Positions 6,181 through 63,856 of a DNA stretch of 64,000 nucleotides are shown here, one piece after another. Source of the DNA: Octopus bimaculoides (taxonomy: Eukaryota). Under the pieces are notes generated by a model. It was not told the DNA's origin, did not search any database, and saw only the letters and a program-made list of their open reading frames with translations. The stretch is taken from positions 160,671,571 through 160,735,570 of the forward strand of contig NC_068981.1 in assembly GCF_001194135.2 (NCBI RefSeq). The letters are read 5' to 3'. How positions within the stretch are numbered: position 1 is the stretch's first letter; each line of letters begins with the position of its first letter. The position numbers were made by a program, and so were the translations under genes.

Positions 6181-6943
6181 AATAGCATATTTTTTTTTTG
6201 TTTTTATAAATAAAATTATTAAAAAATTTCCCTTGTCTGTTTTTATATGTTACATTATGATCATCATCTCTTTCATCATCATCATCATTTTAGCCCTTTA
6301 GCATTCACATTATTCTGTCAAAAGTAATGCGTATTTATTCACATCGTTTTGAATTAATCATGCATTATCTCATAGCTTTGAGATTTTGATGAGGCAACTG
6401 ATTGGTGTGAAAGGCCAGGTTTGGCCAGTTTGAACATAAATATTTAGGTTCCATATGGCTAGCTTAAATGCTAAAGGCTTAATGTCTACTTTTCCATGCC
6501 TGCATAGTTCAAATGCGAGTACATTGGGGACGAGTTTTTACAGTTGAATGCCTTTCCTGTCACCAACCCCATTTGTTTCCAAGTGAGGTAATAATCACTC
6601 AGTCTCTTGAACAACAAACAACCTGGCCATGTTTATGCTGGGAACTGGAAACTGAATGAGCATTTTCTTTACAAAGATCATTCAACATATCAAGTCAAGT
6701 TAAGAAACCCGGAGATGCTTTTGTGGTAGACTGCAATCGAATGACTGTTATGAAGGACTTTATTACAAACCAGCAGACAAGGGAAATATGAACTCCCACA
6801 AACACAAACATGTACATATTGTTATAAAGTTTGAGCTACAACAATGGTTTCAGTTCTTGTAATGACAACTGCATGTGTCAACACCTTATTTATTTCGTCT
6901 CTATTGTTTTGGATTTCCACCTCTGACTTCAAACAGCAAACAC

Positions 6944-7325
6944 CATCATCATCATCATCGTTTAACGTCTGCTTTCCATGCTAACATAGGTTGGACGATT
7001 TGACTGAGTACCGGTGAACTGGATGGCTGCACCAGGCTCCAATCTGATCTGGCAAGGTTTCTACAGCTGGATACCCTTCCTAACGCCAACCACTCCGAGA
7101 GTGCAGTGGGTGCTTTTACGTGCCACCAACACGAGGGCCAGTCATATGTAATACAAATGTATTTATTGATAATAAAATGATTTTCATTATCATCATCATT
7201 TAACATCTGTTTTCCTTGCTGGCATGGGTTGGATAGTTTGACTGAAAACTGGTAAGCTGCACCAGGTTCCAGTCTGATTTGGCATGGTTTCTACAGCTGG
7301 ATGCTCTTGCTAACACCAACCACTT
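6944..7325 (-). mobile_element. Two adjacent family A copies
   Basis: Reverse-complement cores at about 6944-7143 and 7190-7325, each preceded by (CAT)n. Confidence 0.8.
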
Positions 7326-13394: not shown

Positions 13395-13921
13395 GACACT
13401 AAACTCTGCTTGTGAAGACCTCTTGAAGCAAGTGAAATCAAAATCAAATTCGATGACAGCACCGCATGACTGGCTTCCATGCTAGTGGAGCGCTAAGAGC
13501 ACCATCTGGGCATGATTGTTGCCAGGGCTGCTGACTGGCTCCTGTGCCAGTGGCATGTAAAAAGCACCATCCGAGCATGATTGTTACCAGCATCGTTTTA
13601 CTGGCACTTGTGCTGGTAGCACGTGAAAAACAACATTCGAGCAAGGTCGTTACCAGTACTGCTGGACTGGTTCTTGTGCAGGTGGCACGTAAAAACACCA
13701 TCTGAGCGTGGCCGTTGCCCGTACCGCCTGACTGGCCCTCGTGCCAGTGGCACGTAAAAGCACTCACAACACTCTTGGAGTGGTTGGTGTTAGGAAGGGC
13801 ATCCAACCATAGAAACCAAGCCAAATTAGACTGGAGCCTGGTACAGCCCTCTGGCTTACCAATCCCAGTCGAACATTTAACCCATGCCAGCCTGGAAAAT
13901 GGATGCTAAATGATGATGGTA

Positions 13922-13955
<34 letters not shown>

Positions 13956-43000: not shown

Positions 43001-46000
43001 AGCGTCCAAAGATCCTTTCTTACCACTTCGTTCCACATCTTCCTGGGTCTACCCCTTCCACAGGTACCCTCCGCAATTAGAGTTCAGCACTTCTTTATGT
43101 AGCTGCACTCATCCATATGCATCACATGACTAAACCAGCATAGTCTTCCCTCTTGGTGTAATATGGTGTCAAAAATTATTGTCACTCCAAACTGCGAACT
43201 GGTCACTGTGACAGTGTAACATTATCAGTGACCAGGTTGCTGTTTAGAGTGAAGACAGTTTTGAAACCATATTACAAACAGTAAATGTTTAAGTGATGTT
43301 AACAGTTTTTATGTGTTTCTGAACGACCAGTATGTGTCTTCTATGCTGAATCAATATATTCATTTCAAATTTTGGCACAAGGCCAACAATTTCAGGGGAG
43401 GGGATATTACATTGACCCTAGTGCTCAACTGGTACTTATTTTATTGACCCCCGAAAGGATGAAAGGTAAAGTCAACCTTGGGCAGAATTTAAACTCGGAA
43501 TGTAGAGACAGATGAAATACCACTACACATTTTGCCTGGCACAGTAATGATTCTACCTTTCACTGCCTTGCTGATGTACTGTAATGTACATGAGTAAGCA
43601 TCAAAAACAATAATGTTTGAGAGAAATTATGATAATATGCATAAAAATAACAGTCAGGTTAGTTCTATCATTTAAAATTTTGATTTCAAATTTTGGCACA
43701 AGGCCAGCAATTTTGGGGAGGGGGTAAGTTGATTACATTGATTTCAGTACTCTGCTGGTATTTATTTTATTGACCCTGAAAGGATGAAAGGCAAAGTTGA
43801 CCTTGTCAGAATTTGCTATCATTTTTAACATAGTGAGGAAAAGAATTTTAATTAAAATTACTTACAAGATGAGAAGAAAGTGTTAAATCAACGATGAAGG
43901 TATCTGACTGAATGCTGAGGAACACTCTGAAAGTTCTACATGCTGAGGATACATATATTAATCAGTATGTTAATTTTAGTCAAATTTTAGTAATACTCTT
44001 CTTGTTACCTGTAGCTACCTCATTGATTGTCTACTATTTTAGATTCTCATTTTAAACACAGGAGAGAGTATATTGTAGAAGGTTTGATTGCTTAAATTTC
44101 TATTGATTTTGAAGTAGTCTGCATAAACATCAAGCAATGTATTTTGTATATAGTTGAGATAAATGTCATCTAGTGGAGAATGGTGATTGAATGGTGTTCA
44201 TTGCCTCTTGTACTTGATGGTTGCTATAATGGTAATGAAAACAATGAGGAAAGTACCACAAACATTGAAAACTATAGATGATGTTTCATTAAACTACTGT
44301 ATATAATACAATACTGTACACAATATCTCATACACATTGCTGATCAATGTGAGAAGGATGTAAGTGGCTGAATGACATATTAATTTGTTTTAATGTTTTA
44401 GTCAAGTTGGAAGCCAGTGACCTTATGACCCTTTACAGACCTTCCTCCCTCCCACCATACAGGTGGAAGAGAGGAGGGTCTCCTCAGATTGGAGACATGC
44501 TTATAACAGAGTGGACTTTTTTAAAGGTACTCAAGATGCCAGGTGGTGGTGTTGAACCAGATGACAGCTTAGGTCTATCCCTTAAGCAGGTCACAGTGAG
44601 ATTTGAACTCAGAAGACAAAGATGAGAGAGATATCACAACATTCCCTACTATGTATATATATATATAGCTGTCAACACACTGCCTAGTAGGTATCCCATG
44701 TATTAGCACTGATTTTGATTATTTAACTTACAGAGGGAAGAGCAGTTTTCATGACCTTTTTCAGTGCTTTCAAGACTGAAGGAATTTATTATCCTTGTGG
44801 ATTAATGCTTGCAACAGAGTGGTCTTCATTAGAGGTGCCCAAGGGCTAGGTGATGGTAGATGATGGATCCAGTCTACCAACCAAGAAAAATGAACATTTC
44901 ATTTATTGAGCTTCAACCAAATGTTAATAGCAAGGCCTTCTTTGATATGAGTCTATGATGGAGGACACCTGCCCATAGTTCTATGCAGAGATTGAACCCA
45001 AAACCACATAACTCTGAAGTGAATTTCTTAACCACACAGCCATATCTGTCCTTATGGATGTCTGCATCCCCCCCCCCCCAAAAAAAAACCCAGGCATCTT
45101 AGTACCAGTAGATTTACTCCTTTGTTTCAGTTATTAATTGTGCATAAAAACAGTATTTTATTTTTATCTTATAGGGTGTTGATCTCAGACAATATTCCAA
45201 GCAAATAGAGAAAGAATTATTAGAGGTTGAAAATGCTTCTATACAGGGATGTATCCTTTTCATGATATTGTATGTTTTATTTACATGATTTTCATTCTAA
45301 ACTGTTTTGTCAATGTTTAGACATAATAATGATGTTTGCTTGATATAATGATTTGGATATGTTGGCTGTATATTTTTTCTTACATTTTTACTTCCATTTA
45401 GATTAGGCAGCTTGGAAAAAAAATTAAACATTTGCTTTAATGGATAAAATAAATTTTTTGGCTCTACATCTAGGTGTCTATTGTATTACCAGACATTTCA
45501 GAATGGCACCTGTTGTTAAACCAAAGCAAGAAGTTATACATGCTCTGGTTAAGTGCACAATACAATGATTGTAGTAAAATTTGATTTCAAGAGCATAGGA
45601 TTTGTATCTTATCAAAATGTAAACGGTTCCTCTGTCATGAATTGAACTGAAGCTGCTTAAATGAAACCTAAAATCCCAACTCTTTGAGAAGCTGATACAT
45701 TTATGGTTAGATTTCTTTCTGTTGCCAGCCATGAAATGAAAGAAAGAAGAGGATATTTTGGTAATTTGGACACAACTTAGTCACTCTATTCACTTAACTA
45801 ACGATAACTATCTTGAAAAGAGAAAGGAGTGTCTATGTATAGTTAGGTTGACATTGAGATGAAAATCGACATTTATATTTGCTTGTGCATTTCAGCAATC
45901 TGCCAGTTTCAAAATGCATAAAGCATAAAGTTTTATACCATTTGAAATATGTAAAATATACTTATCAGACACCGTTTTATGGTGTAAGTTCTTTAATATT

Positions 46001-49000
46001 TATTATTTTTTTAAATAAAAATAGATATCAAATGAATTTTATTCTTCATTTAATATTATTGAAGGTATTTATTATTTTCTGAGAACTTTAGAGTCTTGAG
46101 TCTACCAAATGGCAAGTTGTGGTATTTATAATCCTCTAAGCAAATTAGTGAAGTTTGATAGATTAAAATAGTTCTAATGATAATTCAAAACCATGTTGCA
46201 GAATCAATTTTTTTGTGACGTTTGCCCTTAACTGCATTTAAAGATATTAAAGAGAGCCAAAATATTGCCAGTCTTCACAAACAGATAGCAGCATGTGATA
46301 CCATCCTAGAGGTAATTTCTATAATTTCCACACATATATTATTGATGTTTATTTCTTCACTTTTTTTATTTCTTGTACTTTTGCCCACACTGTGTAGTTT
46401 TGTGGGGTAATGATAAATTTAGCCATGGGTGAATGGTACTCCTTTATTCCAATTGATATAGTATTCTTCAGTATTCGACAACACATGACATCACACTATA
46501 AATGCAACTAGTAGATGTTACTTATAGAGCCTGCATTGAGCAAATACATCGTCAGACAATCAAAACAGAAATAAAATCTGATTGTCTGATGATATGTTTA
46601 CTCTATGCTGGCCCTACAAGTTTCATCAAGTAATTGCTTATCTATAGTGTGCCATCTTGTGTTGTTGAATACTAAAACATATAAAAATTGGCATAAAGGA
46701 GTGTCACATTCTATCCATGCTCTTTTCTCTTGCATACAACAGGGTGTACAAATGTGCTTTTCACACAGCTATAAGAGTTTGAACTCTTATTTCTAGTAAT
46801 AATTCTGCTTCTAGCACCCACAGTCACAATCAGTGATGACTAAATTTTTCCTATATGGCTTTGTATAGTGGCTAGCTGCTGACATTAATTTTTAGTATAC
46901 ACATTGACATCTTGCCAAATCAGCCATAAATTTATATGGTAAATATATATATTGACAGAGGAATTTAGCTGTTCCATCAAAGCAATGGAGTCCTAATTAC
47001 TGGATGAAAATATAGTCCTGTGATGTATCTTTGCTCATGGGGCAGTTATCTATCCTGTAAATGTATATAAATGTGCTTTTCGTGCAGCTATAAGAGTTTT
47101 AACTCTTATTTCTAGCAATAACTGTACTTTTAGCACCCACAGTTACAATTAGTGTTGACTGAATTTTTCCTATATGGCTTTGTATTGTGGCTAGCTACTT
47201 ACATTAATTTATATATATATATATAGGCTTGGTGATCAAGAGAGAAACAGAAAAGTTTCGGTGGTAGATGGGTTGTTTGGTGTCTGTTTTCCATATCTGA
47301 AAGACTGTTTGATTATTTATATTTACAACACAGAAAAGAGAGAAGACAAAACAGAGAAAAATAATTTCACTGGTTTATGAATCTTTAACTATTTCAATTG
47401 CAGAGGATGGAACAAATGTTAAATGGTTTCCAGGCTGATTTAAGTAGTATCAGTAATGAAATTCAAACATTACAAGAACAGTCGATTGCCATGAACATCA
47501 AACTCAAGAATAGACAGGTTAGTACCAATATTAGATTTCGATTTCCTTTTATTCATTTATAGTTATCAGTAACAACCGCAGCAATCTGAATTCCTTGGGT
47601 GCTGATTGGTGAATCAAAGTTTTGGCAGTTTTGCCTTGTCACCAGTGCAGTTCTGTCCTTCTACCAAACACATGTTATGCTGAATGACTCAATGACCTAT
47701 TTGTAAATAGATGTGATGTGTGGGTGCAGTCTGTTACAAGAAGCTGTGCAACACTGAAAACAAGTGTTTCGTTAATTTGAAGTATTGAGTAAACATTGTC
47801 CAATCAATGAAATGTGCAGTAGATTTGTGTGTTTCTTTCTAAGTGTGGGATGTCTCTCAGACATTTGCTGCTGTATAAGCTGGGGTAAGATTCTACATAT
47901 CTTACCTGCTATGAGGAGACATATTACAGAAGTAGGAAACATACTAAATGATCAGCTAATACATTTCCTATTTTGACTTTAGTGAAACCTGAAGTTAGTA
48001 AATTTATTAAAGAATTATTCAAGTATAATGAGTGTTGGATGTTATAAAATAAAATATTTACACTTGGTTTACAGCCTCATTTTCCTTTATAAATCTGAGG
48101 CCTTGTATTATATGTATAATAATTTGATAATGCAATGTTGTAACGTGGTTTTAATCATATTCATATATTTAGCATCATGATCTTCATTTTACATATGCTT
48201 TTCTATAATGGTATGGGTTGGATGGGTCATTAGGGTTCAGGTAAGTTTTTATTTTTATCATTGTTTGTTAAGTTTCATACTTGGTATGGTTTCTACTGCT
48301 GGATGGCCTTCTTATTACCAACTACTTTACTGAGTGAACTGGATGCATTTTATTATGGCACCAACACTAGAAAGGTGTCTTACCCAAGCAAAAGTAAAGA
48401 ATCTGTTCTCTCTACATTGTCTCCATTTATTCATTCCTTTCTTTCCCACACAACTTGGTGTGTAGAAAGGGGAATTTTTTTGCTAAATCACTGGTACTGT
48501 TGTGCATTACTATCTCTTATCACATAGGTAGCATGCTGTGAGAAAGGAGTTACAGAAGTGATAGGGTGGTAGAAGAGTAATAAATGAGAGACAGTGAGAG
48601 TATGATAGAGAGAATGATGGAGAGAGTAATGAAGGTCATAGTGAAACGAGAGAGAGAGAGAAAAGTATAAGATGAAGAGGAAGTGATAGGAACCTTTCTG
48701 AAGTTCTGTATGTAAATTCTTCATGCTACCTCAAACAATAATCCATTAAACATAACATTAATGTTTCAGGCTGTGCGGGGAGAACTGAGTCAGTTTGTTG
48801 ACGAAATGGTAATTCCTGAGAGTATGGTGTCGTAAGTAACTTACATACAATACATACATTTTACTCAAAGGTCAGTTTTTCAATCAAGAGTTCACGAACT
48901 AATCAATCTTGATCACTGTCATAGAATCTCTTGCAAGTAATCAATTCTTATAAGATGTAGGAAGGTGATTTCTGTACCTTTGCATCTAAGATTATTCAGT

Positions 49001-52700: not shown

Positions 52701-55700
52701 GACTACAGCTGTAGAGAGTAAAACCAAGACTTTAACACTATTCTGCATCACTTCATCAAAATTGACTTTTTAAAGGTGCCTAATCTTTAAAGAGCATTAT
52801 TTTCTGGCCTCAGTGGTTTAATAAACATTTAACCCTTTAGCATTTAAACTGGCCAAATATGTAATACTTGTAGCTTCAAGATTTTAATTATGCCATTCTA
52901 AAAATAAGCAATCATATCATTGAAATAATGATGATACAAGATAATACATGATTAATTTTTTAAAAAGTGTTTAAATAAATATTACATTTGATAAATCAAT
53001 ATGAATGCTAAAAGTTAAATAACAAAGACTATAGATGATTATTACATGTAATGACACTATTTATGATGGGTCATGTAACAGGCAGTTTGTAGTGAACATC
53101 ACTTAGGTTTTCTTATCTAGTTTACCCTCTCTGCTAATCCACAAGTCATATGATACTTTCAAGGAGAGAACTTCATTAGTGATCTCACTTGTAGAAGATG
53201 GGGAGCAAAAATCATGGTTTAGACTATTTTTAGAATTTCATTTTCTTAGAAGGGATTTTGTGATCATAGAATTAGTACTTTATGACAGGTTAATATTTCA
53301 AACTGAATGTATTTGCTTACATTTCTTTTACAGTATGAAGAGCTTGCAGACAAAGATGACTTGATGGGAATTGAAGATACAGCAAAGAAAGATATCCTTA
53401 AATTTCAATATTTGTAAATTTTATATTCATACATTCATTCATTCATTCATTCACCAGGGTGAATCTCTCCCTTGATTCTTGTTAACACCATCATCATCAT
53501 CATCATCATCATCATTTAGCACCTGCCTTCCATGCTGGCATAGAGTAAATGGTTTGATTGGAACTGGCAAGTTGAAGAGCTACATCAAGTTCCAGTCTAA
53601 TTTAGCATGGTTTCTACAGCTGGATGCCCTTCCTATCGCCAACCACTCCAAGAGTGTAATGGGAGTTTTTTATGTGTCACCAGCATGGGTGCCAGTCGTG
53701 TGACACTGGCATCAGCCATGACTATGATTTCACTTGGCTTGACGAGTCTTCTCAAGCACAGCATATCACCAAAGGTTTTGGTCACTAGTCATTGCCTCTT
53801 TAAGGCCCAACATTTGAAGATCATGCTTCACCACCACATTCCATGTCTTCCTGGGGTCACCTCTTCCACAGGTTCCCTTCACACTTAGAGATTGGCACTT
53901 CTTCACACAGCTGTCCTCATCTATACACATCACATGGTCATACTAGTGCAGTTGCCTCTCTTGCACACCACATCTGATGCCTCTTATGTCCAACTTTTCT
54001 CTCAAGATGCTCACACTGTCATACATGCACACTGACTTTGCACACCCAGTGAAGCATACTGGTTTCATTTCTTTCAAGTCTACGCATGTCCTCAGCAGTC
54101 ACAGCCCATGTTTCACTGCTGTGTAGCATAACTGTTCACACACAAGTATCATACAATCTGCCTTTCACTTTGAGGGAGAGGTCTTTAGTTACCAACAGAA
54201 GTAGGAGCTCTCTGAATTTTCCCACCCTGTTCTTATGCTAGCAGCTACACTCTCAGAACATCTCCCTTCTGCTACTGACTTGGTCACCTAGATAATGGAA
54301 ACTATCAACTATTTATTAATGCTGGCATTTGTTTCAAGTATTTTCTATACTCACCACTTTAAGGTTTTGTTGGTGAGCTGGGTTTTTTCGTCTTTTAGGT
54401 ACCTAGGTGAAATTTAATTAAGAATGCAAAGAGTCAGAGTAAATATCACAGGGCATCTGATCCAACATTTTTGCAATTTGTCTATCCACCATTCTTGAGT
54501 AGTAATTTTTTTTTTATCAACCTTTAAAGGATGGAAGGTAAAGCTGACCTCAGCAAGATTTGCAGAGTAATGACAAATATCACTAAGTGTTCTATCCAAC
54601 ACTCTAACAACTTTGCCAATTCACTGCCTTTTATGTTTTATATTGATTAATGTAATTAATTTAAGATGTACCATATTCGAAAGTAAGTCATTTCACATTG
54701 TCATGTCACTGAAATATATTTAAAAATGATTCCTTAATGTTCACAAGGTTTTTCTCTTCAAAGCCTTCTTTAAAGAACAGATCCACAGTGTTCACTGTAG
54801 GAGATAGAGGGGAAGTACTAACTACTCAGCTTGAAGCTCCTGTTATTGTCCCACATGCTGCTCAGAAAAATGAAACCCGGGTATGTCCCAGCTATAATTA
54901 ATATCTCCTTACTTTGAATAGTTCTTGTTGACTATGGCTATCCTACAAAGATAACTGATTGAATGCTTAAAACTCTTGAGATATCTTGTGACAACTGAAA
55001 ATGTTTTGGTTGCTTTTTCTCATGAGTTGTAGTGCATCTGAGCACTGTATACAGTAAGTTCATTCATTCATCAGGGTATTTGTCACTCCTAGAGGGATCC
55101 CTCTCTTGATTCTGGTTGACACCATCTATTAGGGTTTAAAGGGTTAAATGTAATGTGATTCCATTATAAAGACAATAAGGAGATTTACCTGCTATTGGTC
55201 AAACAATTGCATAAAAGTTCTTTCTGTTTATACTCTGTCAGAATTGGTAATTTATTTCCATTACACAGAGTTATGATTGTAGTCAAAGAGCTGAGGAACA
55301 GATTATTTGCTTTATTGAACCTACTTCAATTTAGATCCTATATATTATCTCTAACCCTTATACTTCAAATAAATAACATCATGGAGTTATTTCAGTTTAC
55401 TTCACTCTTCACCCTCAAAAACTTTGATTTGTATTTTCATCATCATTAAGCATCCCTTTTTTTCATTCTGGCGTGGGTTGGGTGGTTCAATATAAACTGA
55501 TGAGCCAGAAAGCTGCACCAAGCTCCAGTGTCCGTTCTGGCATAGTTTCTACTGATGGATGACATTCCTAGCAAGAACCACTTCACAGAGTGACAGAGTG
55601 TACTGGGTGCTTTTTTGTGGTACCTGCATTGGAGAAGCTGCCCACATACCCACAAAACTTCACCATGTACTAGTGAAGTCTGGTGAAGTTACCAAGACTC

Positions 55701-58506
55701 CTCAACTGAGTGGGGTATAGTATTGAGAGATATAAAAGTATGATACAAGGACAAGAGCTGGTGCCTTACTGAAGGGATGAATGATTTTCCTATCTGGAGA
55801 GAGAGAGAGAGAGAGAGAGACAGATGTGAGGTCAAAGTACAGGGTGAATATGAGAAAGAGAGAATAGGATAGAAAAATAGGAAAGGTGTACCTTCATTAT
55901 TATTTGTTTTACAGTGTTTGTGTTTCTTGTCGAGAGAAATGTTTTATAACATATATATATATATTTTATAACATTTTTATTTTTCTCTCCATCTTCTCCT
56001 TTAGTATACATTTGAAAAGCTGTTTCGCAGTCAGCACTACACTTTGATGGATAATTGTTGTCGAGAATATTTGTTCATTGTGGACTTCTTCATGGTATCA
56101 GTTGGAAGTACAGCAGCTCAGGAACTTTTCAATAGCATCATGGGGAAAACACTATCAATGTTTTTGGTATGTAGCTAGTTTTCTATTTCTTGACTTCAAT
56201 TCTACACATTCAACATTTTCTTTACCTACATCATCATCATCGTTTAACGTCTGCTTTCCATGCTAGCATGGGTTGGACGATTTGACTGAGGACTGGTGAA
56301 CCAGATGGCTACACTAGGCTCCAATCTGATTTGGCAGTTTCTACAGCTGGATGCCTTTCCTAATGCCAACCACTCCGAGAGTGTAGTGGGTGCTTTTACG
56401 TGCCACCGGCACGAAGGCCAGTCAGGAGGTACTGGCAATGGCCACGCTCGAAATGGTGTATTTTACGTGCCACCTGCACAGGAGCCAGTCCATATATATG
56501 TACTAGTTACTTCACAAGCCAGCAAAGGTGCCTCTGTCTATTGTAATGGGTAAAGTGAAATTGTTATCTGCCCATCTATGAAAAAGGACATTGATACATT
56601 GGATAATATAGTTCTAGATAGATTATGTCTAACAAAGACAATCATCATTGCTGGAATAGTTTTAATCATTGGGCAACATTATCAGGTGTAACCTAGAGCT
56701 AAACAACAATATTGTTTAGGTATTTAGTTTTTATTTGTCCATTTCTACATGCGATACAATTTCAATGGAAATACTGCAAATTGTCTGCTAAGAGAGATTT
56801 AAGACTTTCCAAATAAAATAATTCTATTGAAATATAGAAGGAACTGAAATGGTATGATATGTCTAAATTATGTGCTTGAGAAAAGAATTTGCGCAAATCA
56901 GAAAAATATCTAGCTCCAAATTTGGCCTCTTATAACTGCCACTTCTGTCATTATTTTCACACCTGATTTTTCCATGCTTGCATGAGTTGGGCAGGTCCTT
57001 CCAAGCATAGTGTCATGTCATTTATGACATTCCTATGTCACCTCCTTTGTGTACACACACACACACACACACATTCCTGCAGCCCAATGTCACTGTTCTC
57101 TCTCTCTCCTGTTCTCTCTCTCTCTCTCTCTCCCACTCACTACATTTCCCTTTCCCTCCCCTCTTCCCCTTTGCATTCATGTGAACTCCCTGCTTGTACC
57201 TACTGTCCAATTCTCTACCACTCCATTTACATTCACCTCCTTGTACCTTAAGAGTACACCCTAGATCATAGCCACCATTTCTCTCTCACTGGGGTAGCCA
57301 TGCTTCTCCTCTACAGCAAGACATCTGTTTCTGTCCCTCTATCATAGTTTAATCTCTCATCACCTGACACAAAGCCACCCCTCTCAGTTGAGGGATCACG
57401 GTCTTGGAACTTACTCAGTCACCTCGCCAGTGCTGGTGCCACATCCAAAAGCACCTTGTAGAAACCATGCCAAAGCAGACAGTAAAACTTGGTACAGTCC
57501 TCTGGCTTGTCAGCTCCTGTCAAACTGTCCAACCCATGCTAGTGTGGAAGATGGATGTTAAATGATGATGATATATATACCAATGAATTAGCAACAAGTT
57601 CATCAAAAACAAATTCTCAATTTTATATTGCTTGATACCCACTAGATCCTGTGAAAACCACCCAACCCATGCCAGCGTAGAAAATAGACATTAAATGATG
57701 ATGTGTGTGTGTGTATACACACATACATACAAATAGTCTCTTTCAATTCATTTATAAATACTCCTTTCTACTGGAGGTACAAGGTCTCAAATTTGTGGGG
57801 AGCAGGACTAGTCGATTACATTGACTCCAATGTTTCACTGGTACTTAATTTATCGACCCCGAAAGGATGAAAGGCAAAGTTGACCTCAGTGGAATTTGAA
57901 CTCAGATCTGAGCGATGAGTGAAATACCACTAAGCATTTTGTCCAGCGTGCTAACGATTCTGCCAGCTCGCTGCCTTAATTCATTTATAAATATCTTTTC
58001 TTTAAAAATTTTTCTATTGAACTATTTCTTATTCTGAAAACAAAAAAAAAAAAAAAAAAATTTAAGTATGTTTTTATTTTCTTTGTTGATTTTCTAAAGT
58101 TTTCTCCTGTAGTTATTTATTTTATGCACAAAATTTAATGCAGTAGTTTTCAAACTTTGAAATGTTATTGGCTAAGTGATTTGTCACTATTGCTTGATTT
58201 ACAGGAACAAGTCTATTATAGGCCTAAGAAAAAGGTAGGAGGCATGTAGGAGTAAATTTGTCATTATTGTCATTTGTTACCCCCAAGGCAGCCTCTAGTA
58301 AGCAAACTTGTCATGCAGGATGTTCTAGCTATGACTGTCTTGTATTTTTTGTTCTTGTAAACAAAGCATGGTGATATGTTAAGAAGTTCAGTTTACAACT
58401 TACATGGTTCTGAGTTTGATTCCACTATCCCTCATTTTGATAATATAGCTTTGGGTCAACCTAACCTAGTGAAATTTGATAAATGGAAACCATGTGCCAG
58501 CCTATT

Positions 58507-58541
<35 letters not shown>

Positions 58542-61350
58542 CCTTTAATTTACAAGTAGGAGGAAAAGTATTAATACTTGATATGTATAATAATTGTCAT
58601 TCATTTATCTGAAGTTGAAGCTTCCCTAAGTGAGTTTTGTAAAAAATGGAAACATGGAACTCAGAGTAGCAATGGAGGGAAACCCCATTTTCAAATAAAT
58701 AAATGTATTTGCTGGCACAAGCATGTTGTTACAAAGTTCCTTTTGCAAGTACATACTTGGTTCCAAGTTTGATCCCATTGCATGATACCATGAACAAATG
58801 TCTTCTACTGCAACCTTGGATGAGCATTGCTGTGACTGAAATTTGGTTGGCTAACCACAGTTCAATGACTGAAACCAGTAAAAGAATTGAATATCTAGGA
58901 TTAAATTATTTAAAGTGTTATGCAATAGCATAGAGGATCCCATTGACTTATTATCAGGGCTGGCCCTAGGGTTGCTGGCACCCTGGGCAAGCTGAACTTC
59001 AGTGTGTGCAAACTGATGGTTGTGGAAATTTCTTTGTCTTTGTCATGCCCTCCTTGGTGCCCCGGGTGACTGCCTGAATTGCTGGTACCTTGAGACGGTC
59101 CTGCTTATTACCATAATAGTAGTTGTTTAACTGCAGGTCAGCCTTGATTGAACAGAACTATGATCAGAGATCTTCCAGTCATGACTATCCTGTTCTTTCT
59201 TTGTCAGTCATGGTATCTATCTATATATATAAAGATGAGAATGTGTATCTGTCTGTGTGTGTGTGTGTGTGTGTGTGTCTGTCTGTGTGTCTGTCTGTGT
59301 GTGTGTGTCTGTCTGTGTGTGTGTGTCTGTCTGTGTGTGTGTGTNNNNNNNNNNNNNNNNNNNNNNNNNNNNNNNNNNNNNNNNNNNNNNNNNNNNNNNN
59401 NNNNNNNNNNNNNNNNNNNNNNNNNNNNNNNNNNNNNNNNNNNNNNNNNNNNNNNNNNNNNNNNNNNNNNNNNNNNNNNNNNNNNNNNNNNNNNNNNNNN
59501 NNNNNNNNNNNNNNNNNNNNNNNNNNNNNNNNNNNNNNNNNNNNNNNNNNNNNNNNNNNNNNNNNNNNNNNNNNNNNNNNNNNNNNNNNNNNNNNNNNNN
59601 NNNNNNNNNNNNNNNNNNNNNNNNNNNNNNNNNNNNNNNNNNNNNNNNNNNNNNNNNNNNNNNNNNNNNNNNNNNNNNNNNNNNNNNNNNNNNNNNNNNN
59701 NNNNNNNNNNNNNNNNNNNNNNNNNNNNNNNNNNNNNNNNNNNNNNNNNNNNNNNNNNNNNNNNNNNNNNNNNNNNNNNNNNNNNNNNNNNNNNNNNNNN
59801 NNNNNNNNNNNNNNNNNNNNNNNNNNNNNNNNNNNNNNNNNNNNNNNNNNNNNNNTGTGGGTGTCTGTCTGTGTGTGTGTCTGTCTGTGTGTGTGTCTGT
59901 CTGTGTGTGTGTCTGTCTGTGTGTGTGTCTGTGTGTGTCTCTGTCTGTGTGTGTCTCTGTCAGTGTGTGTGTCTGTCTGTCTGTGTGTGTCTCTGTCTGT
60001 GTGTCTGTCTGTGTGTCTGTCTGTCTGTGTGAATCCCTAAAACTCGAGAACTACACAACCGATTTCATTCAAATTTTACACATGCCTTACTTAGGGGCCA
60101 AACAAATTTCAAGTTCCTGCTTAATGCGAACCCAGAGCAATCTCTTATCTCCTCCACTATTGCAGTATTACGTGTCACTAGTGGAAAAATAACAACTCTC
60201 TATTGTAATGTCAGATAGTTTCACTATTAATACTGTAACTATTAAAGTGAAACTATTATTTCACATATATACATACATACATAGTCTGTCTCCCTAAAAC
60301 TCGAGAACTACACAACTGATTTCATTCAAATTTTACACATGCCTTACCTAGGGTCCATGTAGTGTCATAGGCCCCAAAAATTTTCAACTTCCTGTCTAAT
60401 GTGATCCACTATTTCAGTATTACATGTCAAAGTGGTACAATAACATTTCTGTATTGTAATGTCTGATACTTTCACTTTAATAGTTTCGCTATTAATACTG
60501 AAACTATTAAAGTGAAGCTATTATTTCACATACATACATATGTATATGTGTAGATGTATAGATATACATGTATATATATGTGTACATATATATGTATATA
60601 TATAGATGTATCGTCTGACTGGCCTTCGTGCGGGTGACACGTAAAAGCACCTACTACACTCTCTGAGTGGTTGGCGTTAGGAAGGGCATCCAGCTGTAGA
60701 AACTCTGCCAAATTTAGATTGGAGCCTGGTGTTGCCATCCGGTTTCACCAGTCCTCAGTCAAATCGTCCAACCCATGCTAGCATGGAAAGCGGACGTTAA
60801 ACGATGATGGTGATGATGATGATGTAATATGTACACATATATATATGCACATATATACATGCATATATTTATACGTATATATATGTACACATACATACAT
60901 ATATACATATACGAAGACACATGCCAAGTTGCCACACAGTGGGACTGAACCCAGGATGATGTGTTTTGGAACCAAGTTTCTTACCACACAGCTACACCTG
61001 CACCTATATATATATGTATGCATGTATGTCATCATCNNNNNNNNNNNNNNNNNNNNNNNNNNNNNNNNNNNNNNNNNNNNNNNNNNNNNNNNNNNNNNNN
61101 NNNNNNNNNNNNNNNNNNNNNNNNNNNNNNNNNNNNNNNNNNNNNNNNNNNNNNNNNNNNNNNNNNNNNNNNNNNNNNNNNNNNNNNNNNNNNNNNNNNN
61201 NNNNNNNNNNNNNNNNNNNNNNNNNNNNNNNNNNNNNNNNNNNNNNNNNNNNNNNNNNNNNNNNNNNNNNNNNNNNNNNNNNNNNNNNNNNNNNNNNNNN
61301 NNNNNNNNNNNNNNNNNNNNNNNNNNNNNNNNNNNNNNNNNNNNNNNNNN

Positions 61351-61381
<31 letters not shown>

Positions 61382-63856
61382 AGTTAGTGAGACCACTTAA
61401 TTTAGTCATTTTTCCTAAGCCAAGATGAATACAATTGTACTCTTGGAAGCTGTAGAGTCACCCGAGCATACAAAATGAGCGTTATTTATAATTCAATGGT
61501 ACAACACTGTAAAAGTTTGCTTTGAGATATACTTAGATTATGATTTCTGCAATGTGGTGCATAAATTGCCAAGTAAAGGAGAGGCATCTTTGCCTCTACT
61601 GACTCAATTGCAATGTGTTATTTTGAGTAAAGTTATTTGGTTGCAGACCTCCTTTGAGTCTTTTTATTATGACTGGCTCAGAGATAGTCCCCAGACGGTA
61701 ACATTGATTTCAAGGCCTTCCCAGATAAGTGACTGGTCATTCAAAGAGATTTATAAATTGCCAAGATCACTATGCCGATAGGTAACTGAACAGAATAAAT
61801 TTGCAAACTCCAGAGGTGACACTTTCATTTCCCCTTAGCCCTCACATCACACAGTTGTTAATGTTTATTTGAGTTGGGTCATGCCCTTCCAATTACTATA
61901 GATCCATAATGCATCTTACGACTGAGGAATCCTACATTGGGGAGTTGTAATGACTAGGGTAGGGTAGCTGACTGCTTATTGTGATCATTCGTCTTTTGGT
62001 TTCCTGTAACTTTGCTCTCTTTTACAAACCCAGTGAACATTCATATATTTACGATTTCAAAGAAATTTGAACAATAGATATAAGACCCAAGTTAAAAAAA
62101 AAGATTCCCAACAATTCAACTTCTCTGGTTGACTTTAATTCCCACATTTCAGAGCTCCATTTTTCAGGAGCAAAAACCTTTGAATAAGTTTCATAAGATT
62201 TGGATTTTGGAATCTGGGCATAAAGATGAGTAGTATGGGATAAATATGTCATGATTAGAATTTTTGTTAGGGTGTGTAAAGAAGGAAAGAACCCTCATTA
62301 AAATTCTTAATCTGCAATTTTGATGAAATTCAAATCATAGCTATTCCAGTTCATTAGAGAAAATATGAAAGAAATGTCTAATTCTTCAGTTCTATGTGAC
62401 ATGGTCAAAGCCTGGTATCTCTGCTAGTATTTAATATATCCTTCCTTTTTCTGAATCACTAAAGTTTGATATGAAGGAGATTTAGCTGCCATTTCTGTGA
62501 GATTGAGTATGTAGAGAATTCATCCCATTTCCAATAAAAACAACAAAAATTGAAAAGTACTGTCTTATGTTTTAAATTTTTTAATTGACTACTTTTTGTT
62601 AATTGTAGTTTTGAATTTATTTATTTATTTTCTCTTTCCAGAAACATATGGAAGTTTACACAAATGATTGCTTTGATTCTATTGCCATCTTTCTCTGCAT
62701 TCATATCATTAATCGTTATCGTACCATCATGCTTAAACGCAATGTACCTGCTCTGGAGAGGTTGGTTTCATTTTTACTTTATTTGTTGTCACATTACACA
62801 TTCAACAAGTTGTCTTGATTTTGTATCTTTCAACAGCACAACAACACAATCCTGAAAACAGTTTCTCATCTTGCAGTCAACAGCAACATGCAATTAATGA
62901 TTTTAAAGTCATTACAAATGCTAGGACTCACAATCTCTAATGAGCTTATGGCAACCTAATATAACACTTAAAACTGCATCTCAAAAGCTGGTTTTCCAAT
63001 GCAAGGCCAGGAAATTCTTCATCTTCATTTGATTTCTGGCCCTCTACAAAGCTCAAGTAAAACTCACAATGGACTCGTGCTTTTATATCTGAAATGTTAC
63101 TGCTGTTACATATATACATCCTAACCTGCATCCAAAAAGTAGCTAGGAATTCTAATTATATCATGGTCTTCATATACCAGAAGTTTATTTCTTGCTTTTC
63201 AGCTCTTGGCAATAGAGTTTTTTTGTTTTATTGAATCAGTTTACCCATGCAAGCATGACTAATTGGATATAAAGCTAGAAATATAGTGCTAATATATATT
63301 TTATCACATTCTTCTGGGTTAGTAAAATAACTAACTGTAATGTACTGGGAAAGTGTGGTAAAATTGATCTTGGTAGAGTTTGAACTTGGTATAACAAGTT
63401 ACTGAACTAGTAACAGTAAAAATCTAGTCTAATATTACATTAAATTCTACCTCTCTTCAATAATTACGCCCCAGGATCTCCACTCTTAGTTATTATTAAT
63501 TAATTGTTAAATGTGATATGATATCTGACAAGAAGAGGTGTAACATATTACTGGAATTAAAAACCGGATGAATAGAGAAGCTTGTCAAAGTAGATTTCCA
63601 CGACTCAATGTTAAATGAAAATGTTTTGTGTTTAACTACTTAATACCTTGTATAATATTTCATCAACAACTATATCAAAGACATTCTATATCATCATCAT
63701 AATCATGGTCTTTGTCATCATTCTTATTGAAGGTACTGGCAAACACTTCAGGACATAATGTGGCCAAGATTCCAATATATACTTGAACTAAATATTCATA
63801 GCGTTAAAGAATGTGATCCCCAGAAACTTGGACAAATTGATATCCGGCCCCATTAT
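38285..63856 (+). CDS. VPS52: Vacuolar protein sorting-associated protein 52 (GARP/EARP subunit), first 15 exons, 491 codons; continues beyond window
   Basis: Exons 38285-38320, 41398-41479, 42163-42215, 45175-45250, 46244-46311, 47404-47517, 48770-48831, 49082-49232, 49947-50047, 52307-52439, 53334-53391, 54747-54880, 56005-56166, 62642-62760, 63733-63856. Includes [79 protein letters not shown] and DIRPHY, all collinear with human VPS52. Exon 1 ([12 protein letters not shown]) is the least certain. Confidence 0.95.
39555..40010. repeat. Unclassified interspersed repeat flanked by (ATT)n
   Basis: GC-richer block bounded by (TAT)n tracts; shares AGTGATCTCATAT with 2570-2591. Confidence 0.4.
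40195..40535 (-). mobile_element. Second RLE-type (R4/Dong-like) LINE 3' fragment
   Basis: [27 protein letters not shown]...[11 protein letters not shown]...[10 protein letters not shown] on the minus strand. Confidence 0.8.
42650..43150 (-). mobile_element. 5'-truncated RTE LINE (ORF2 C-terminus plus family A-type 3' UTR)
   Basis: Family A tail contiguous with a decayed RTE ORF2 end ([13 protein letters not shown]...[14 protein letters not shown]-like on the minus strand). Confidence 0.7.
43157..43276. mobile_element. Small foldback MITE
   Basis: TGTAATATGGT / ACCATATTACA ends, inner CTGGTCACTG / CAGTGACCAG. Confidence 0.6.
45251..46243 (+). other. U12-type (minor spliceosome) GT-AG intron, VPS52 intron 4
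   Basis: 5'SS GTATCCTTTT (U12 consensus RTATCCTTT); branch-like GCCTTTAAC at 46224-46232, about 11 nt before the AG at 46242-46243. Confidence 0.85.
46750..47210 (+). repeat. About 140-bp diverged direct repeat
   Basis: 46750-46891 vs 47069-47210 (AAATGTGCTTTTC...ACATTAATTT). Confidence 0.85.
51355..51737 (-). mobile_element. Family C SINE, young full-length copy
   Basis: Nearly identical to 20455-20828. Confidence 0.85.
51796..52060. mobile_element. About 265-bp foldback MITE
   Basis: ATAGATAAAGATAGA..TGGC / GCCA..TCTATCTTTATCTAT ends; inner AGCTTTACAGCATTT..TTCAGACCCTAAAACCC / GGGTTTTAGGGTCTGAA..AAATGCTGTAAAGCT. Confidence 0.8.
53392..54746 (+). other. U12-type intron with AT 5' end and apparent AA 3' end, VPS52 intron 11
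   Basis: 5'SS ATATCCTTA after ...TAKK-G; branch site TTCCTTAAT 54730-54738; only an acceptor ending at 54746 (AA) restores the frame G|GG TTT TTC = [11 protein letters not shown]. Confidence 0.8.
53487..54312 (-). mobile_element. 5'-truncated RTE LINE inside the U12 AT-AA intron
   Basis: Minus strand, with frameshifts: [12 protein letters not shown]...[45 protein letters not shown], the RTE ORF2 C-terminus, running into a family A-type 3' end with (TGA)n tail. Confidence 0.85.
55436..55720 (-). mobile_element. Diverged family A / RTE 3' copy
   Basis: CATCATCATTAAGCATCCC...CCAAGCTCCAGTGTCC..GCATAGTTTCTAC.GATGGATG. Confidence 0.6.
56228..56490 (-). mobile_element. Family A copy
   Basis: Reverse-complement core, low divergence. 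Confidence 0.85.
57395..57572 (+). mobile_element. Family A copy (diverged)
   Basis: ...GTCAAACTGTCCAACCCATGCTAGTGTGGAAGATGGATGTTAAATGATGATGAT. Confidence 0.7.
57760..57978 (-). mobile_element. Family B SINE, near full length
   Basis: Same A/B boxes and CCTTTCATCCTTTCGGGGTCGATAAA core. Confidence 0.8.
58205..58234 (+). CDS. Candidate 30-nt cassette microexon of VPS52 ([10 protein letters not shown])
   Basis: TTGCTTGATTTACAG | GAACAAGTCTATTATAGGCCTAAGAAAAAG | GTAGGA; phase 0/0, no stop, inside phase-0 intron 13. Confidence 0.5.
58955..59103. mobile_element. hAT (Tip100-like) MITE
   Basis: CAGGGCTGGCCCTAGG / CCTTGAGACGGTCCTG ends; 8-bp TSD CTTATTAT / CTTATTAC. Confidence 0.8.
59218..60525 (+). 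mobile_element. Helitron-like non-autonomous element with (TGTC/TG)n array and internal tandem duplication
   Basis: TCTATATATATAAAGATGAGAATGTG start, long TG/TGTC array across a gap, duplicated CCCTAAAACTCGAGAACTACACAAC.GATTTCATTCAAATTTTACACATGCC units at about 60035 and 60292. Confidence 0.55.
60612..60826 (+). mobile_element. Young family A copy
   Basis: Differs from the copy at 78-272 at only a few positions. Confidence 0.85.

What the first reader, a model, noticed from the sequence alone, without database searches (positions are those of the whole stretch)
53392..54747. VPS52 intron 11 is a U12 intron that is in frame only as AT-AA, with tandem AC/AA/AG acceptors
Seen: exon 11 ends ...GCA AAG AAA G, then ATATCCTTA (U12 5'SS); the 3' end reads TTCCTTAAT-GTTC-AC-AA-GG-TTT-TTC. 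Cutting after AC (54744) or AG (54747) shifts the frame. Only cutting after AA (54746) gives [14 protein letters not shown], collinear with human KKGFFSKPSLRSR. Established: U12 introns tolerate AT-AN ends, choose the 3'SS largely by distance from the branch point, and can miss by 1-2 nt. Inference: a rare AT-AA minor intron, where use of the adjacent AG would give an NMD-type frameshift and could limit GARP levels. The intron also carries an 800-bp RTE LINE.
Basis: partly seen in the sequence, partly recalled or inferred. Interest (0 to 1): 0.8.

Follow-up and report, generated by a model that had tools for sequence, protein, structure and literature searches.

The report
Octopus VPS52 AT-AA minor intron
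Intron 11 of the Octopus VPS52 gene is an ancient minor-spliceosome (U12-type) intron whose last base has changed from C to A; this is a real but already well-known kind of splice-site variant, and its main practical effect is to trip up gene-prediction software.

Summary
Exon 11 ends ...GCA AAG AAA G at 53391. The intron starts ATATCCTTA, a perfect U12 donor. A perfect branch box, TTCCTTAAT, lies at 54730-54738, followed by gttcACAAGG. Only a cut after AA (54746) keeps the frame.

The T5 run is not an assembly error: O. sinensis and O. vulgaris have the same acceptor. Argonauta, Sepia and a chiton have canonical AC. In Argonauta and Sepia the AC sits exactly where Octopus has AA, at the same 8-nt spacing from the branch box, so Octopus has a C-to-A point change of the terminal base.

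The intron is ancient. Human VPS52 has a listed U12 AT-AC intron at the same codon position, and so does a skate. The bivalves Mytilus and Pecten independently carry AT-AA in this same intron. Nine Mytilus RNA-seq contigs show splicing exactly after AA, even though a G follows it.

RefSeq Octopus models already encode the AT-AA junction. AT-AA is the commonest non-canonical minor-intron type. The result is therefore a new member of a known kind, of low interest.

Nothing supports the idea that use of the adjacent AG limits GARP levels. No direct Octopus cDNA was available. The RTE label for the LINE-like fragment could not be verified.

The parts
53334..53391 (+). VPS52 coding exon 11 ([19 protein letters not shown] plus the first base of the Gly codon), phase-1 end
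   Evidence: Pfam Vps52_C E=6e-17 on the exon 11+12 peptide
53392..54746 (+). Intron 11: U12-type, A-type minor intron with AT-AA termini, 1355 nt
   Evidence: unique exact spliced solution; orthologous U12 introns in human, skate, chiton, bivalves and other cephalopods
53392..53399 (+). U12 5' splice site ATATCCTT
   Evidence: identical in all orthologs examined that retain a U12 intron here
53414..53415 (+). Cryptic GT that the old O. bimaculoides model ([14 protein letters not shown]) used together with the AG at 54746-47; probably an annotation artefact
   Evidence: P0136; the G is a C in O. sinensis and O. vulgaris
54730..54738 (+). U12 branch-point box TTCCTTAAT (CTCCTTAAC in O. sinensis and O. 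vulgaris)
54743..54744 (+). Upstream AC, out of frame, only 6 nt after the branch box; probably unused
   Evidence: every ortholog examined has 8 nt or more of spacing
54745..54746 (+). Terminal AA of the intron; the last A is homologous to the C of AC in Argonauta and Sepia
   Evidence: ungapped 8-nt spacer in all three cephalopod lineages
54746..54747 (+). AG that overlaps the junction; its use would delete 1 nt and give GFSLQSLL*
54747..54880 (+). VPS52 coding exon 12 (completes Gly, then [44 protein letters not shown]); contains the T5 run at 54749-54753
   Evidence: the T5 run is identical in O. sinensis and O. vulgaris
53486..53718 (.). Dispersed ~230-bp repeat (SINE-like), more than 15 copies in the window in both orientations; flanked by (ATTC)7 at 53425-53453 and overlapping (CAT)9 at 53489-53515
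53727..54314 (-). Antisense LINE-like 3' fragment (minus-strand translation ...[17 protein letters not shown]...); other copies in the window and in the O. sinensis locus
   Evidence: no Pfam hit, so the clade is unverified

Best explanation
The window is Octopus bimaculoides VPS52. Intron 11 (53392-54746) is an ancient phase-1 U12-dependent (minor-spliceosome) intron of the A-type. U11/U6atac recognise G|ATATCCTT and U12 pairs with TTCCTTAAT. The 3' cut falls at the conserved short distance after the branch box (8 nt after the box, 9 nt after the branch A), after AA at 54746. This joins ...AAG AAA G to GG TTT TTC and gives AKK-G-FFSS. The AA terminus arose by a single C-to-A substitution of the last intron base. 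That change occurred in the Octopus lineage after its split from Argonauta and before the O. bimaculoides / O. vulgaris-sinensis split. The minor spliceosome tolerates AT-AN termini, so the change was probably near-neutral. Shown here: the sequence, the frame, conservation across assemblies and species, and AT-AA use in the Mytilus ortholog. Inferred: actual use of AA in Octopus and dependence on the U12 spliceosome.
For: Only AT-AA is in frame. The donor and branch box match the U12 consensus perfectly and there is no polypyrimidine tract. Three Octopus assemblies share gttcacAA|GGTTTTTC, while the introns differ by about 6% between O. bimaculoides and O. sinensis/vulgaris. Argonauta has TCCTTAACattggtAC|GG and Sepia has TCCTTAACcaccaaAC|GT, so AC occupies the position of Octopus AA with the same 8-nt spacer. 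Ten Sepia-like RNA-seq contigs confirm the cut after AC. The skate and chiton introns are AT-AC at the same codon. Human VPS52 chr6:33267322-33267681 is listed as U12 AT_AC with GCAAAGAAAG|ATATCCTA...CATCTTAC|GATTCT (PMC8280824 supplements). The Mytilus genome reads G|ATATCCTTG...TTTCCTTAATttgaatcAA|GC, and nine RNA-seq contigs read GCCAAGAAAG|GCTTCTTC, an unambiguous AT-AA junction. Pecten is likewise AT-AA. The RefSeq O. bimaculoides and O. sinensis proteins read AKKGFFSSKPS. AT-AA is the commonest non-canonical minor-intron terminus (PMC10639083), and AT-AC/AT-AA switching between orthologs is documented (MSH3; PMC1557818).
Against: No Octopus transcript spanning the junction could be retrieved, so AA use in Octopus rests on the frame, comparative data and RefSeq models whose supporting evidence I cannot see. 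The 9-nt distance from branch A to the 3'ss is shorter than the 11-13 nt optimum reported for human (PMC3584512). The overlapping AG would lie at 10 nt, so some AG use cannot be excluded.
Confidence: 0.9

Rival explanations
1. Assembly indel: the true genome has T6 at 54749-54753, so a canonical AT-AC cut after 54744 is in frame (KKEGFFSS).
For: With T6 the AC acceptor would be in frame, and the protein tolerates length variation here (P0002, P0005, P0008).
Against: Three assemblies of three species (the window, GCA_006345805.1 and GCA_951406725.2) all show T5. The AC at 54743-44 lies only 6 nt after the branch box, shorter than in any ortholog (8-15 nt). The Octopus AA aligns without gaps to the AC of Argonauta and Sepia. 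All 15 coding exons in the window are intact and match XP_014791263.2.
Confidence: 0.01
2. The intron is removed by the major spliceosome as GT-AG, using the cryptic donor at 53414 and the AG at 54746-47. This gives [14 protein letters not shown], as in the older O. bimaculoides model A0A0L8I3E3.
For: The combination is in frame in O. bimaculoides and was annotated once (P0136).
Against: The donor context TTT|GTAAAT is weak, and the acceptor has no polypyrimidine tract. The donor G is a C in O. sinensis and O. vulgaris. The insert is absent from all orthologs and from the current RefSeq models. Perfect U12 signals are conserved from human to molluscs.
Confidence: 0.02
3. The closely spaced AC, AA and AG sites are used as competing acceptors. 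A substantial share of transcripts uses AG (or AC), is frameshifted and is degraded by NMD, which tunes VPS52 and GARP/EARP dosage.
For: The AG cut gives a stop after 8 codons, far upstream of the last junction. U12 3'ss selection is reported to be error-prone, and A-type introns are spliced less efficiently (PMC3584512, PMC8280824). The AG lies at a feasible distance of 10 nt from the branch A.
Against: The AA|G arrangement follows automatically from a terminal A in front of an exon that begins with G. It recurs in Mytilus and Pecten, and all nine Mytilus transcript contigs fetched use AA, although the look-up could only find in-frame products. Nothing marks the acceptor as under special conservation: the last 58 nt of the intron differ at 3 positions, like the intron average. 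There is no local RNA structure. No data exist on isoform ratios.
Confidence: 0.07

Closest known systems
Human VPS52 U12-type AT-AC intron (chr6:33267322-33267681; listed in the CENATAC datasets, PMC8280824)
   Same: Orthologous: same codon position and phase (GCA AAG AAA G|ATATCC ... |GA/GG TTC/TTT), A-type U12 donor, U12 branch box
   Different: The terminal base is C in human and A in Octopus. The human branch box is TTCCCTGAC, 15 nt from the 3'ss, against 8 nt here. The human intron is 360 nt against 1355 nt, and it carries none of the Octopus repeats.
Mytilus californianus and Pecten maximus VPS52 intron 11 (AT-AA)
   Same: Orthologous intron, same AT-AA termini, the same AA|G context, a short (9 nt) spacer; use of AA is shown by RNA-seq contigs in Mytilus
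   Different: Independent origin: the chiton, Argonauta and Sepia retain AC, so the C-to-A change occurred separately in bivalves and in Octopus
Human AT-AA U12 introns such as MSH3, RASGRP4 and FLJ21106 (Sheth et al. 2006, PMC1557818)
   Same: Same class (A-type minor intron ending in AA). MSH3 shows the same AT-AC to AT-AA switching between species.
   Different: Different genes. Octopus VPS52 has not been described individually in the papers I could search.
NAGNAG-type tandem acceptors of U2 introns
   Same: Closely spaced alternative 3' cut sites
   Different: Here the offsets are 1 and 2 nt, so they shift the frame. The spliceosome is U12-type, and no evidence shows that more than one site is used.

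Membership tests
U12-type (minor) spliceosomal intron | Extended 5' splice site consensus |RTATCCTT | tested here: met
   ATATCCTT at 53392-53399, directly after the last exon base
U12-type (minor) spliceosomal intron | Branch-point box TCCTTAAY close to the 3' splice site (human optimum 11-13 nt from the branch A) | tested here: met
   TTCCTTAAT at 54730-54738, 9 nt from the branch A to the last intron base. This is shorter than the human optimum but identical in Argonauta and Sepia, where the cut is confirmed by cDNA (PMC3584512).
U12-type (minor) spliceosomal intron | No polypyrimidine tract upstream of the 3' splice site | tested here: met
   ...gaaatatatttaaaaatgattccttaatgttcacaa is A/T-mixed with no pyrimidine run
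U12-type (minor) spliceosomal intron | Orthology to established U12 introns | tested here: met
   Same position and phase as the listed human VPS52 AT_AC U12 intron and as introns with U12 signals in skate, chiton, bivalves and cephalopods
U12-type (minor) spliceosomal intron | Removal depends on U11/U12/U4atac/U6atac snRNPs | not testable with these tools
   Needs a knockdown or an in vitro assay. O. sinensis is among the species analysed for minor-intron conservation in PMC10639083, and the same gene has a second U12-type intron.
A-type AT-AA subclass of minor introns | The intron begins AT and ends AA at the junction actually used in mRNA | tested here: inconclusive
   For Octopus: it is the only in-frame option, three assemblies agree, and RefSeq proteins match, but no Octopus cDNA could be obtained. 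For the Mytilus ortholog the feature is met directly by 9 RNA-seq contigs.
   Only a ~590-bp antisense 3' fragment with a LINE-like C-terminal motif is present. It is dispersed in Octopus loci, has no Pfam hit, and no repeat library was available to assign a clade.

The most novel reading that the evidence does not exclude
The C-to-A change at the intron's last base, which arose independently in Octopus and in pteriomorph bivalves and always in front of an exonic G, created a 1-nt AA/AG acceptor pair. The minor spliceosome partitions between the two, producing a conserved unproductive (frameshift/NMD) isoform that sets VPS52 dosage and couples it to minor-spliceosome activity. In coleoids, A-to-I editing of the terminal A might also modulate it.
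Probability: 0.05. Interest if true: 0.5.

Novelty: new member of a known kind. Interest (0 to 1): 0.2.

Why it matters
The biological importance is modest. The locus is a clean, well-polarised example of the terminal nucleotide of a very old minor intron drifting from AC to AA. It did so twice independently in molluscs at the same intron, which fits the view that AT-AN termini are nearly interchangeable for the minor spliceosome.

The practical importance is for annotation. The O. vulgaris annotation splits VPS52 into two genes at this intron: a 319-aa model that ends at an in-intron stop, and a 410-aa model with an invented first exon. The first O. bimaculoides annotation forced a GT-AG junction that inserts 8 spurious residues. 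Annotation pipelines for cephalopods should allow AT-AN minor introns.

Tried and rejected
1. Homolog search with the 64-aa junction peptide and with a 162-aa query. Both returned only fragments and did not retrieve the Octopus protein, so the word index appears to favour hits of similar length. They say nothing about whether Octopus transcripts exist.
2. Exact look-up of the acceptor-spanning [11 protein letters not shown]...SYN, intended as a test of the T5 run in independent read assemblies. It is not on record. The three genome assemblies replaced this test.
3. RNA editing or structure: folding of 54640-54860 gave z=+1.9, less stable than shuffled sequence, so no dsRNA around the acceptor would suggest ADAR editing of the terminal A.
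4. Hidden ncRNA in the intron: Rfam found nothing.
5. Pfam on the antisense LINE-like translation: no hit.
6. Motif enrichment: ATATCCTT and TCCTTAAY are not over-represented in the window. A second ATATCCTT at 62436 lies inside intron 13 and is a chance match.
7. Dietrich et al. 2005 and Levine & Durbin 2001 are not held in the library, so I cite them only through PMC8280824 and PMC3584512.
8. I first assigned the second human VPS52 U12 intron to the EIRDEY site in exon 10. That was wrong. The junction translates to I-R-D|Y-I and matches ENASIQ(G/D)|YI, which is Octopus intron 4.

Full report
**Observation.** The sequence is as described.
- Coding exon 11 (53334-53391) ends GCA AAG AAA G.
- The intron opens with ATATCCTTA at 53392.
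- Near its end lies TTCCTTAAT (54730-54738), followed by gttc-AC-AA-G-G-TTTTT-C.
- Exon 12 runs to 54880 and is followed by GTATGT.

Translation shows that a cut after AC or after AG runs into a stop within about nine codons. A cut after AA (54746) gives ...[31 protein letters not shown]....

I scanned all donor and acceptor pairs within a few bases. With the donor fixed at |ATATCCTT, no other in-frame pair has acceptable termini. An exact spliced alignment with the O. bimaculoides protein has a single solution: 53392-54746, phase 1.

The two motifs are not enriched in the window as a whole. The signal lies in their exact placement at the exon borders and in their conservation.

**Gene and organism.**
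- The exon 11+12 peptide hits Pfam Vps52_C.
- A 449-aa concatenate of the window's exon blocks hits Octopus sinensis VPS52 at 99%.
- The 90% cluster of that protein holds O. bimaculoides XP_014791263.2, O. vulgaris, Argonauta hians and Acanthosepion pharaonis proteins, plus four Logan transcript ORFs.
- The window's exons are identical to the O. bimaculoides protein, so the window is O. bimaculoides.
- Fifteen coding exons lie at 38234-63862, and all are intact. The gene runs off the window end.

**Is T5 an assembly error?** No. I fetched the loci of O. sinensis (GCA_006345805.1, L004) and O. vulgaris (GCA_951406725.2, L017). Both read ...CTCCTTAACgttcacAA|GGTTTTTCTCTTC, although their introns differ from the window's by about 6%.

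**Polarity and mechanism.** The table lists the sequence after the branch box in each species.

| Species | Branch box, spacer and junction | Termini | Spacer (nt) |
|---|---|---|---|
| O. bimaculoides (window) | TTCCTTAAT-gttcacAA\|GG | AT-AA | 8 |
| O. sinensis, O. vulgaris | CTCCTTAAC-gttcacAA\|GG | AT-AA | 8 |
| Argonauta | ATCCTTAAC-attggtAC\|GG | AT-AC | 8 |
| Sepia | TTCCTTAAC-caccaaAC\|GT | AT-AC | 8 |
| Chiton (Liolophura) | TTCCTTAAC-aatttgttAC\|GT | AT-AC | 10 |
| Pecten | CTCCTTAAC-acttcggAA\|GC | AT-AA | 9 |
| Mytilus | TTCCTTAAT-ttgaatcAA\|GC | AT-AA | 9 |
| Skate | GACCTTGAC-tcaccgctccAC\|GA | AT-AC | 12 |
| Human | TTCCCTGAC-tctgacccatcttAC\|GA | AT-AC | 15 |

- All donors are |ATATCC at the same phase-1 codon position.
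- The three cephalopod lineages share an ungapped 8-nt spacer, so the Octopus AA is a C-to-A substitution of the terminal base.
- The upstream AC at 54743-44 would leave a 6-nt spacer, shorter than in any ortholog.
- Ten Sepia-like RNA-seq contigs (L007-L016) read AAGAAAG|GTTTTTTT, which confirms cleavage after AC at that spacing.
- Nine Mytilus RNA-seq contigs (L021-L029) read GCCAAGAAAG|GCTTCTTC. Set against the genome, this places the junction unambiguously as ATATCC...TCAA|GC. AT-AA is therefore used in vivo at this very intron in a mollusc, with a G following it just as in Octopus.
- An unidentified eukaryote contig has a short U2-type GT-AG intron at the same position (L003). Another has lost the intron (L002). 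Both are the usual fates of minor introns.

**Annotation history.** The current RefSeq O. bimaculoides and O. sinensis proteins and the Argonauta protein read AKK-G-FFSS.

The older O. bimaculoides model (A0A0L8I3E3) reads [14 protein letters not shown]. This corresponds to a forced GT(53414)-AG(54747) junction. That GT is CT in O. sinensis and O. vulgaris.

The O. vulgaris annotation breaks the gene in two here. The upstream model stops at the in-intron TAA, 26 nt past the donor.

**What is known.**
- The supplementary datasets of PMC8280824 list human VPS52 chr6:33267322-33267681 as U12 AT_AC, with GCAAAGAAAG|ATATCCTA and ...CATCTTAC|GATTCT. It appears among introns scored after CENATAC depletion, with values 0.063, 0.262 and 0.199 that I read as control, depleted and difference.
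- AT-AA is the commonest non-canonical minor-intron terminus in animals and plants, and most non-canonical termini differ by one base from a canonical pair (PMC10639083).
- Sheth et al. list 3 human and 4 mouse AT-AA introns, including MSH3, which is AT-AA in human and AT-AC in mouse (PMC1557818).
- The review PMC3584512 states that non-canonical termini work, often less efficiently. It also states that the optimum distance from branch site to 3'ss is 11-13 nt, and that U12 3'ss choice is error-prone.

The class, the gene's minor intron and the evolutionary switching are therefore all known. The Octopus instance is a new member. It is implicit in RefSeq, but none of the papers I could search describes it.

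**The regulatory idea.** AG use would give GFSLQSLL*, a plausible NMD substrate. Nothing indicates that it is used or selected for.
- An AG overlapping the junction is unavoidable when a terminal A precedes an exonic G, and it recurs in Mytilus and Pecten.
- The acceptor region is no more conserved than the rest of the intron.
- There is no local RNA structure.

I put substantial AG/AC use at about 7%.

**Repeats.** Intron 11 contains (ATTC)7 and (CAT)9 microsatellites. It also contains a ~230-bp dispersed repeat with more than 15 copies in the window, and a ~590-bp antisense LINE-like 3' fragment. The whole intron aligns with O. sinensis and O. vulgaris, so the insertions predate their split. 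The Argonauta intron is about 840 nt. The RTE clade could not be verified.

**Verdict.** The missing piece is direct Octopus junction reads. The finding is a new member of a known kind, with interest 0.2.

Noticed in passing
window 45251-46243 (+): Intron 4 of the same gene is a second U12-type intron of the GT-AG subtype, phase 1: GGA T|GTATCCTTT ... tgCCCTTAACtgcatttaaAG|AT. The GTATCC donor is conserved in O. sinensis, Argonauta, Sepia, chiton, Pecten and Mytilus. It corresponds to the second listed human VPS52 U12 intron (ATT CGG GAT T|GTATCCTC). VPS52 therefore carries two ancient minor introns shared by human and molluscs.
   Followed up: partly
L017 1-6100 (O. vulgaris GCA_951406725.2): The deposited annotation splits VPS52 into a 319-aa and a 410-aa gene at the AT-AA intron. 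The upstream model ends at the TAA 26 nt into the intron. The downstream model starts with an invented MYHIR exon inside the intron.
   Followed up: yes
L019 10347-10547 (Pecten maximus) and L020 15641-16152 (Mytilus californianus): The orthologous intron is also AT-AA in two pteriomorph bivalves, whereas the chiton, Argonauta and Sepia have AT-AC. This indicates parallel C-to-A changes at the same intron end.
   Followed up: yes
window 53486-53718 and more than 15 other sites (e.g. 58-275, 6941-7143, 13709-13939, 56229-56437, 60617-60824): A ~230-bp dispersed repeat occurs in both orientations throughout the window at 70-80% identity and also in the O. sinensis and O. vulgaris loci. It is probably a SINE, and the inverted copies within one gene could form dsRNA.
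   Followed up: no
L004, L005, L006, L018, L019 first ~1 kb; L007-L010: A gene encoding a 152-aa Ribosomal_S13 (PF00416) protein lies head-to-head immediately upstream of VPS52 in cephalopods, chiton and scallop. Some Logan RNA-seq contigs join both genes.
   Followed up: no
L001 32907-33035 (Rhinoraja longicauda): The skate exon homologous to window exon 14 (KHMEVYTN...) matches on the opposite strand relative to exons 11-13, and the deposited skate VPS52 model has only 105 aa. This could be a local inversion, a misassembly or a paralogous fragment.
   Followed up: no
window 59856-60051 and 60513-60971: Long GT/CA-rich and TA/CA-rich low-complexity tracts inside intron 13 account for the GC-skew spike at 58-60 kb in the composition profile.
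   Followed up: no
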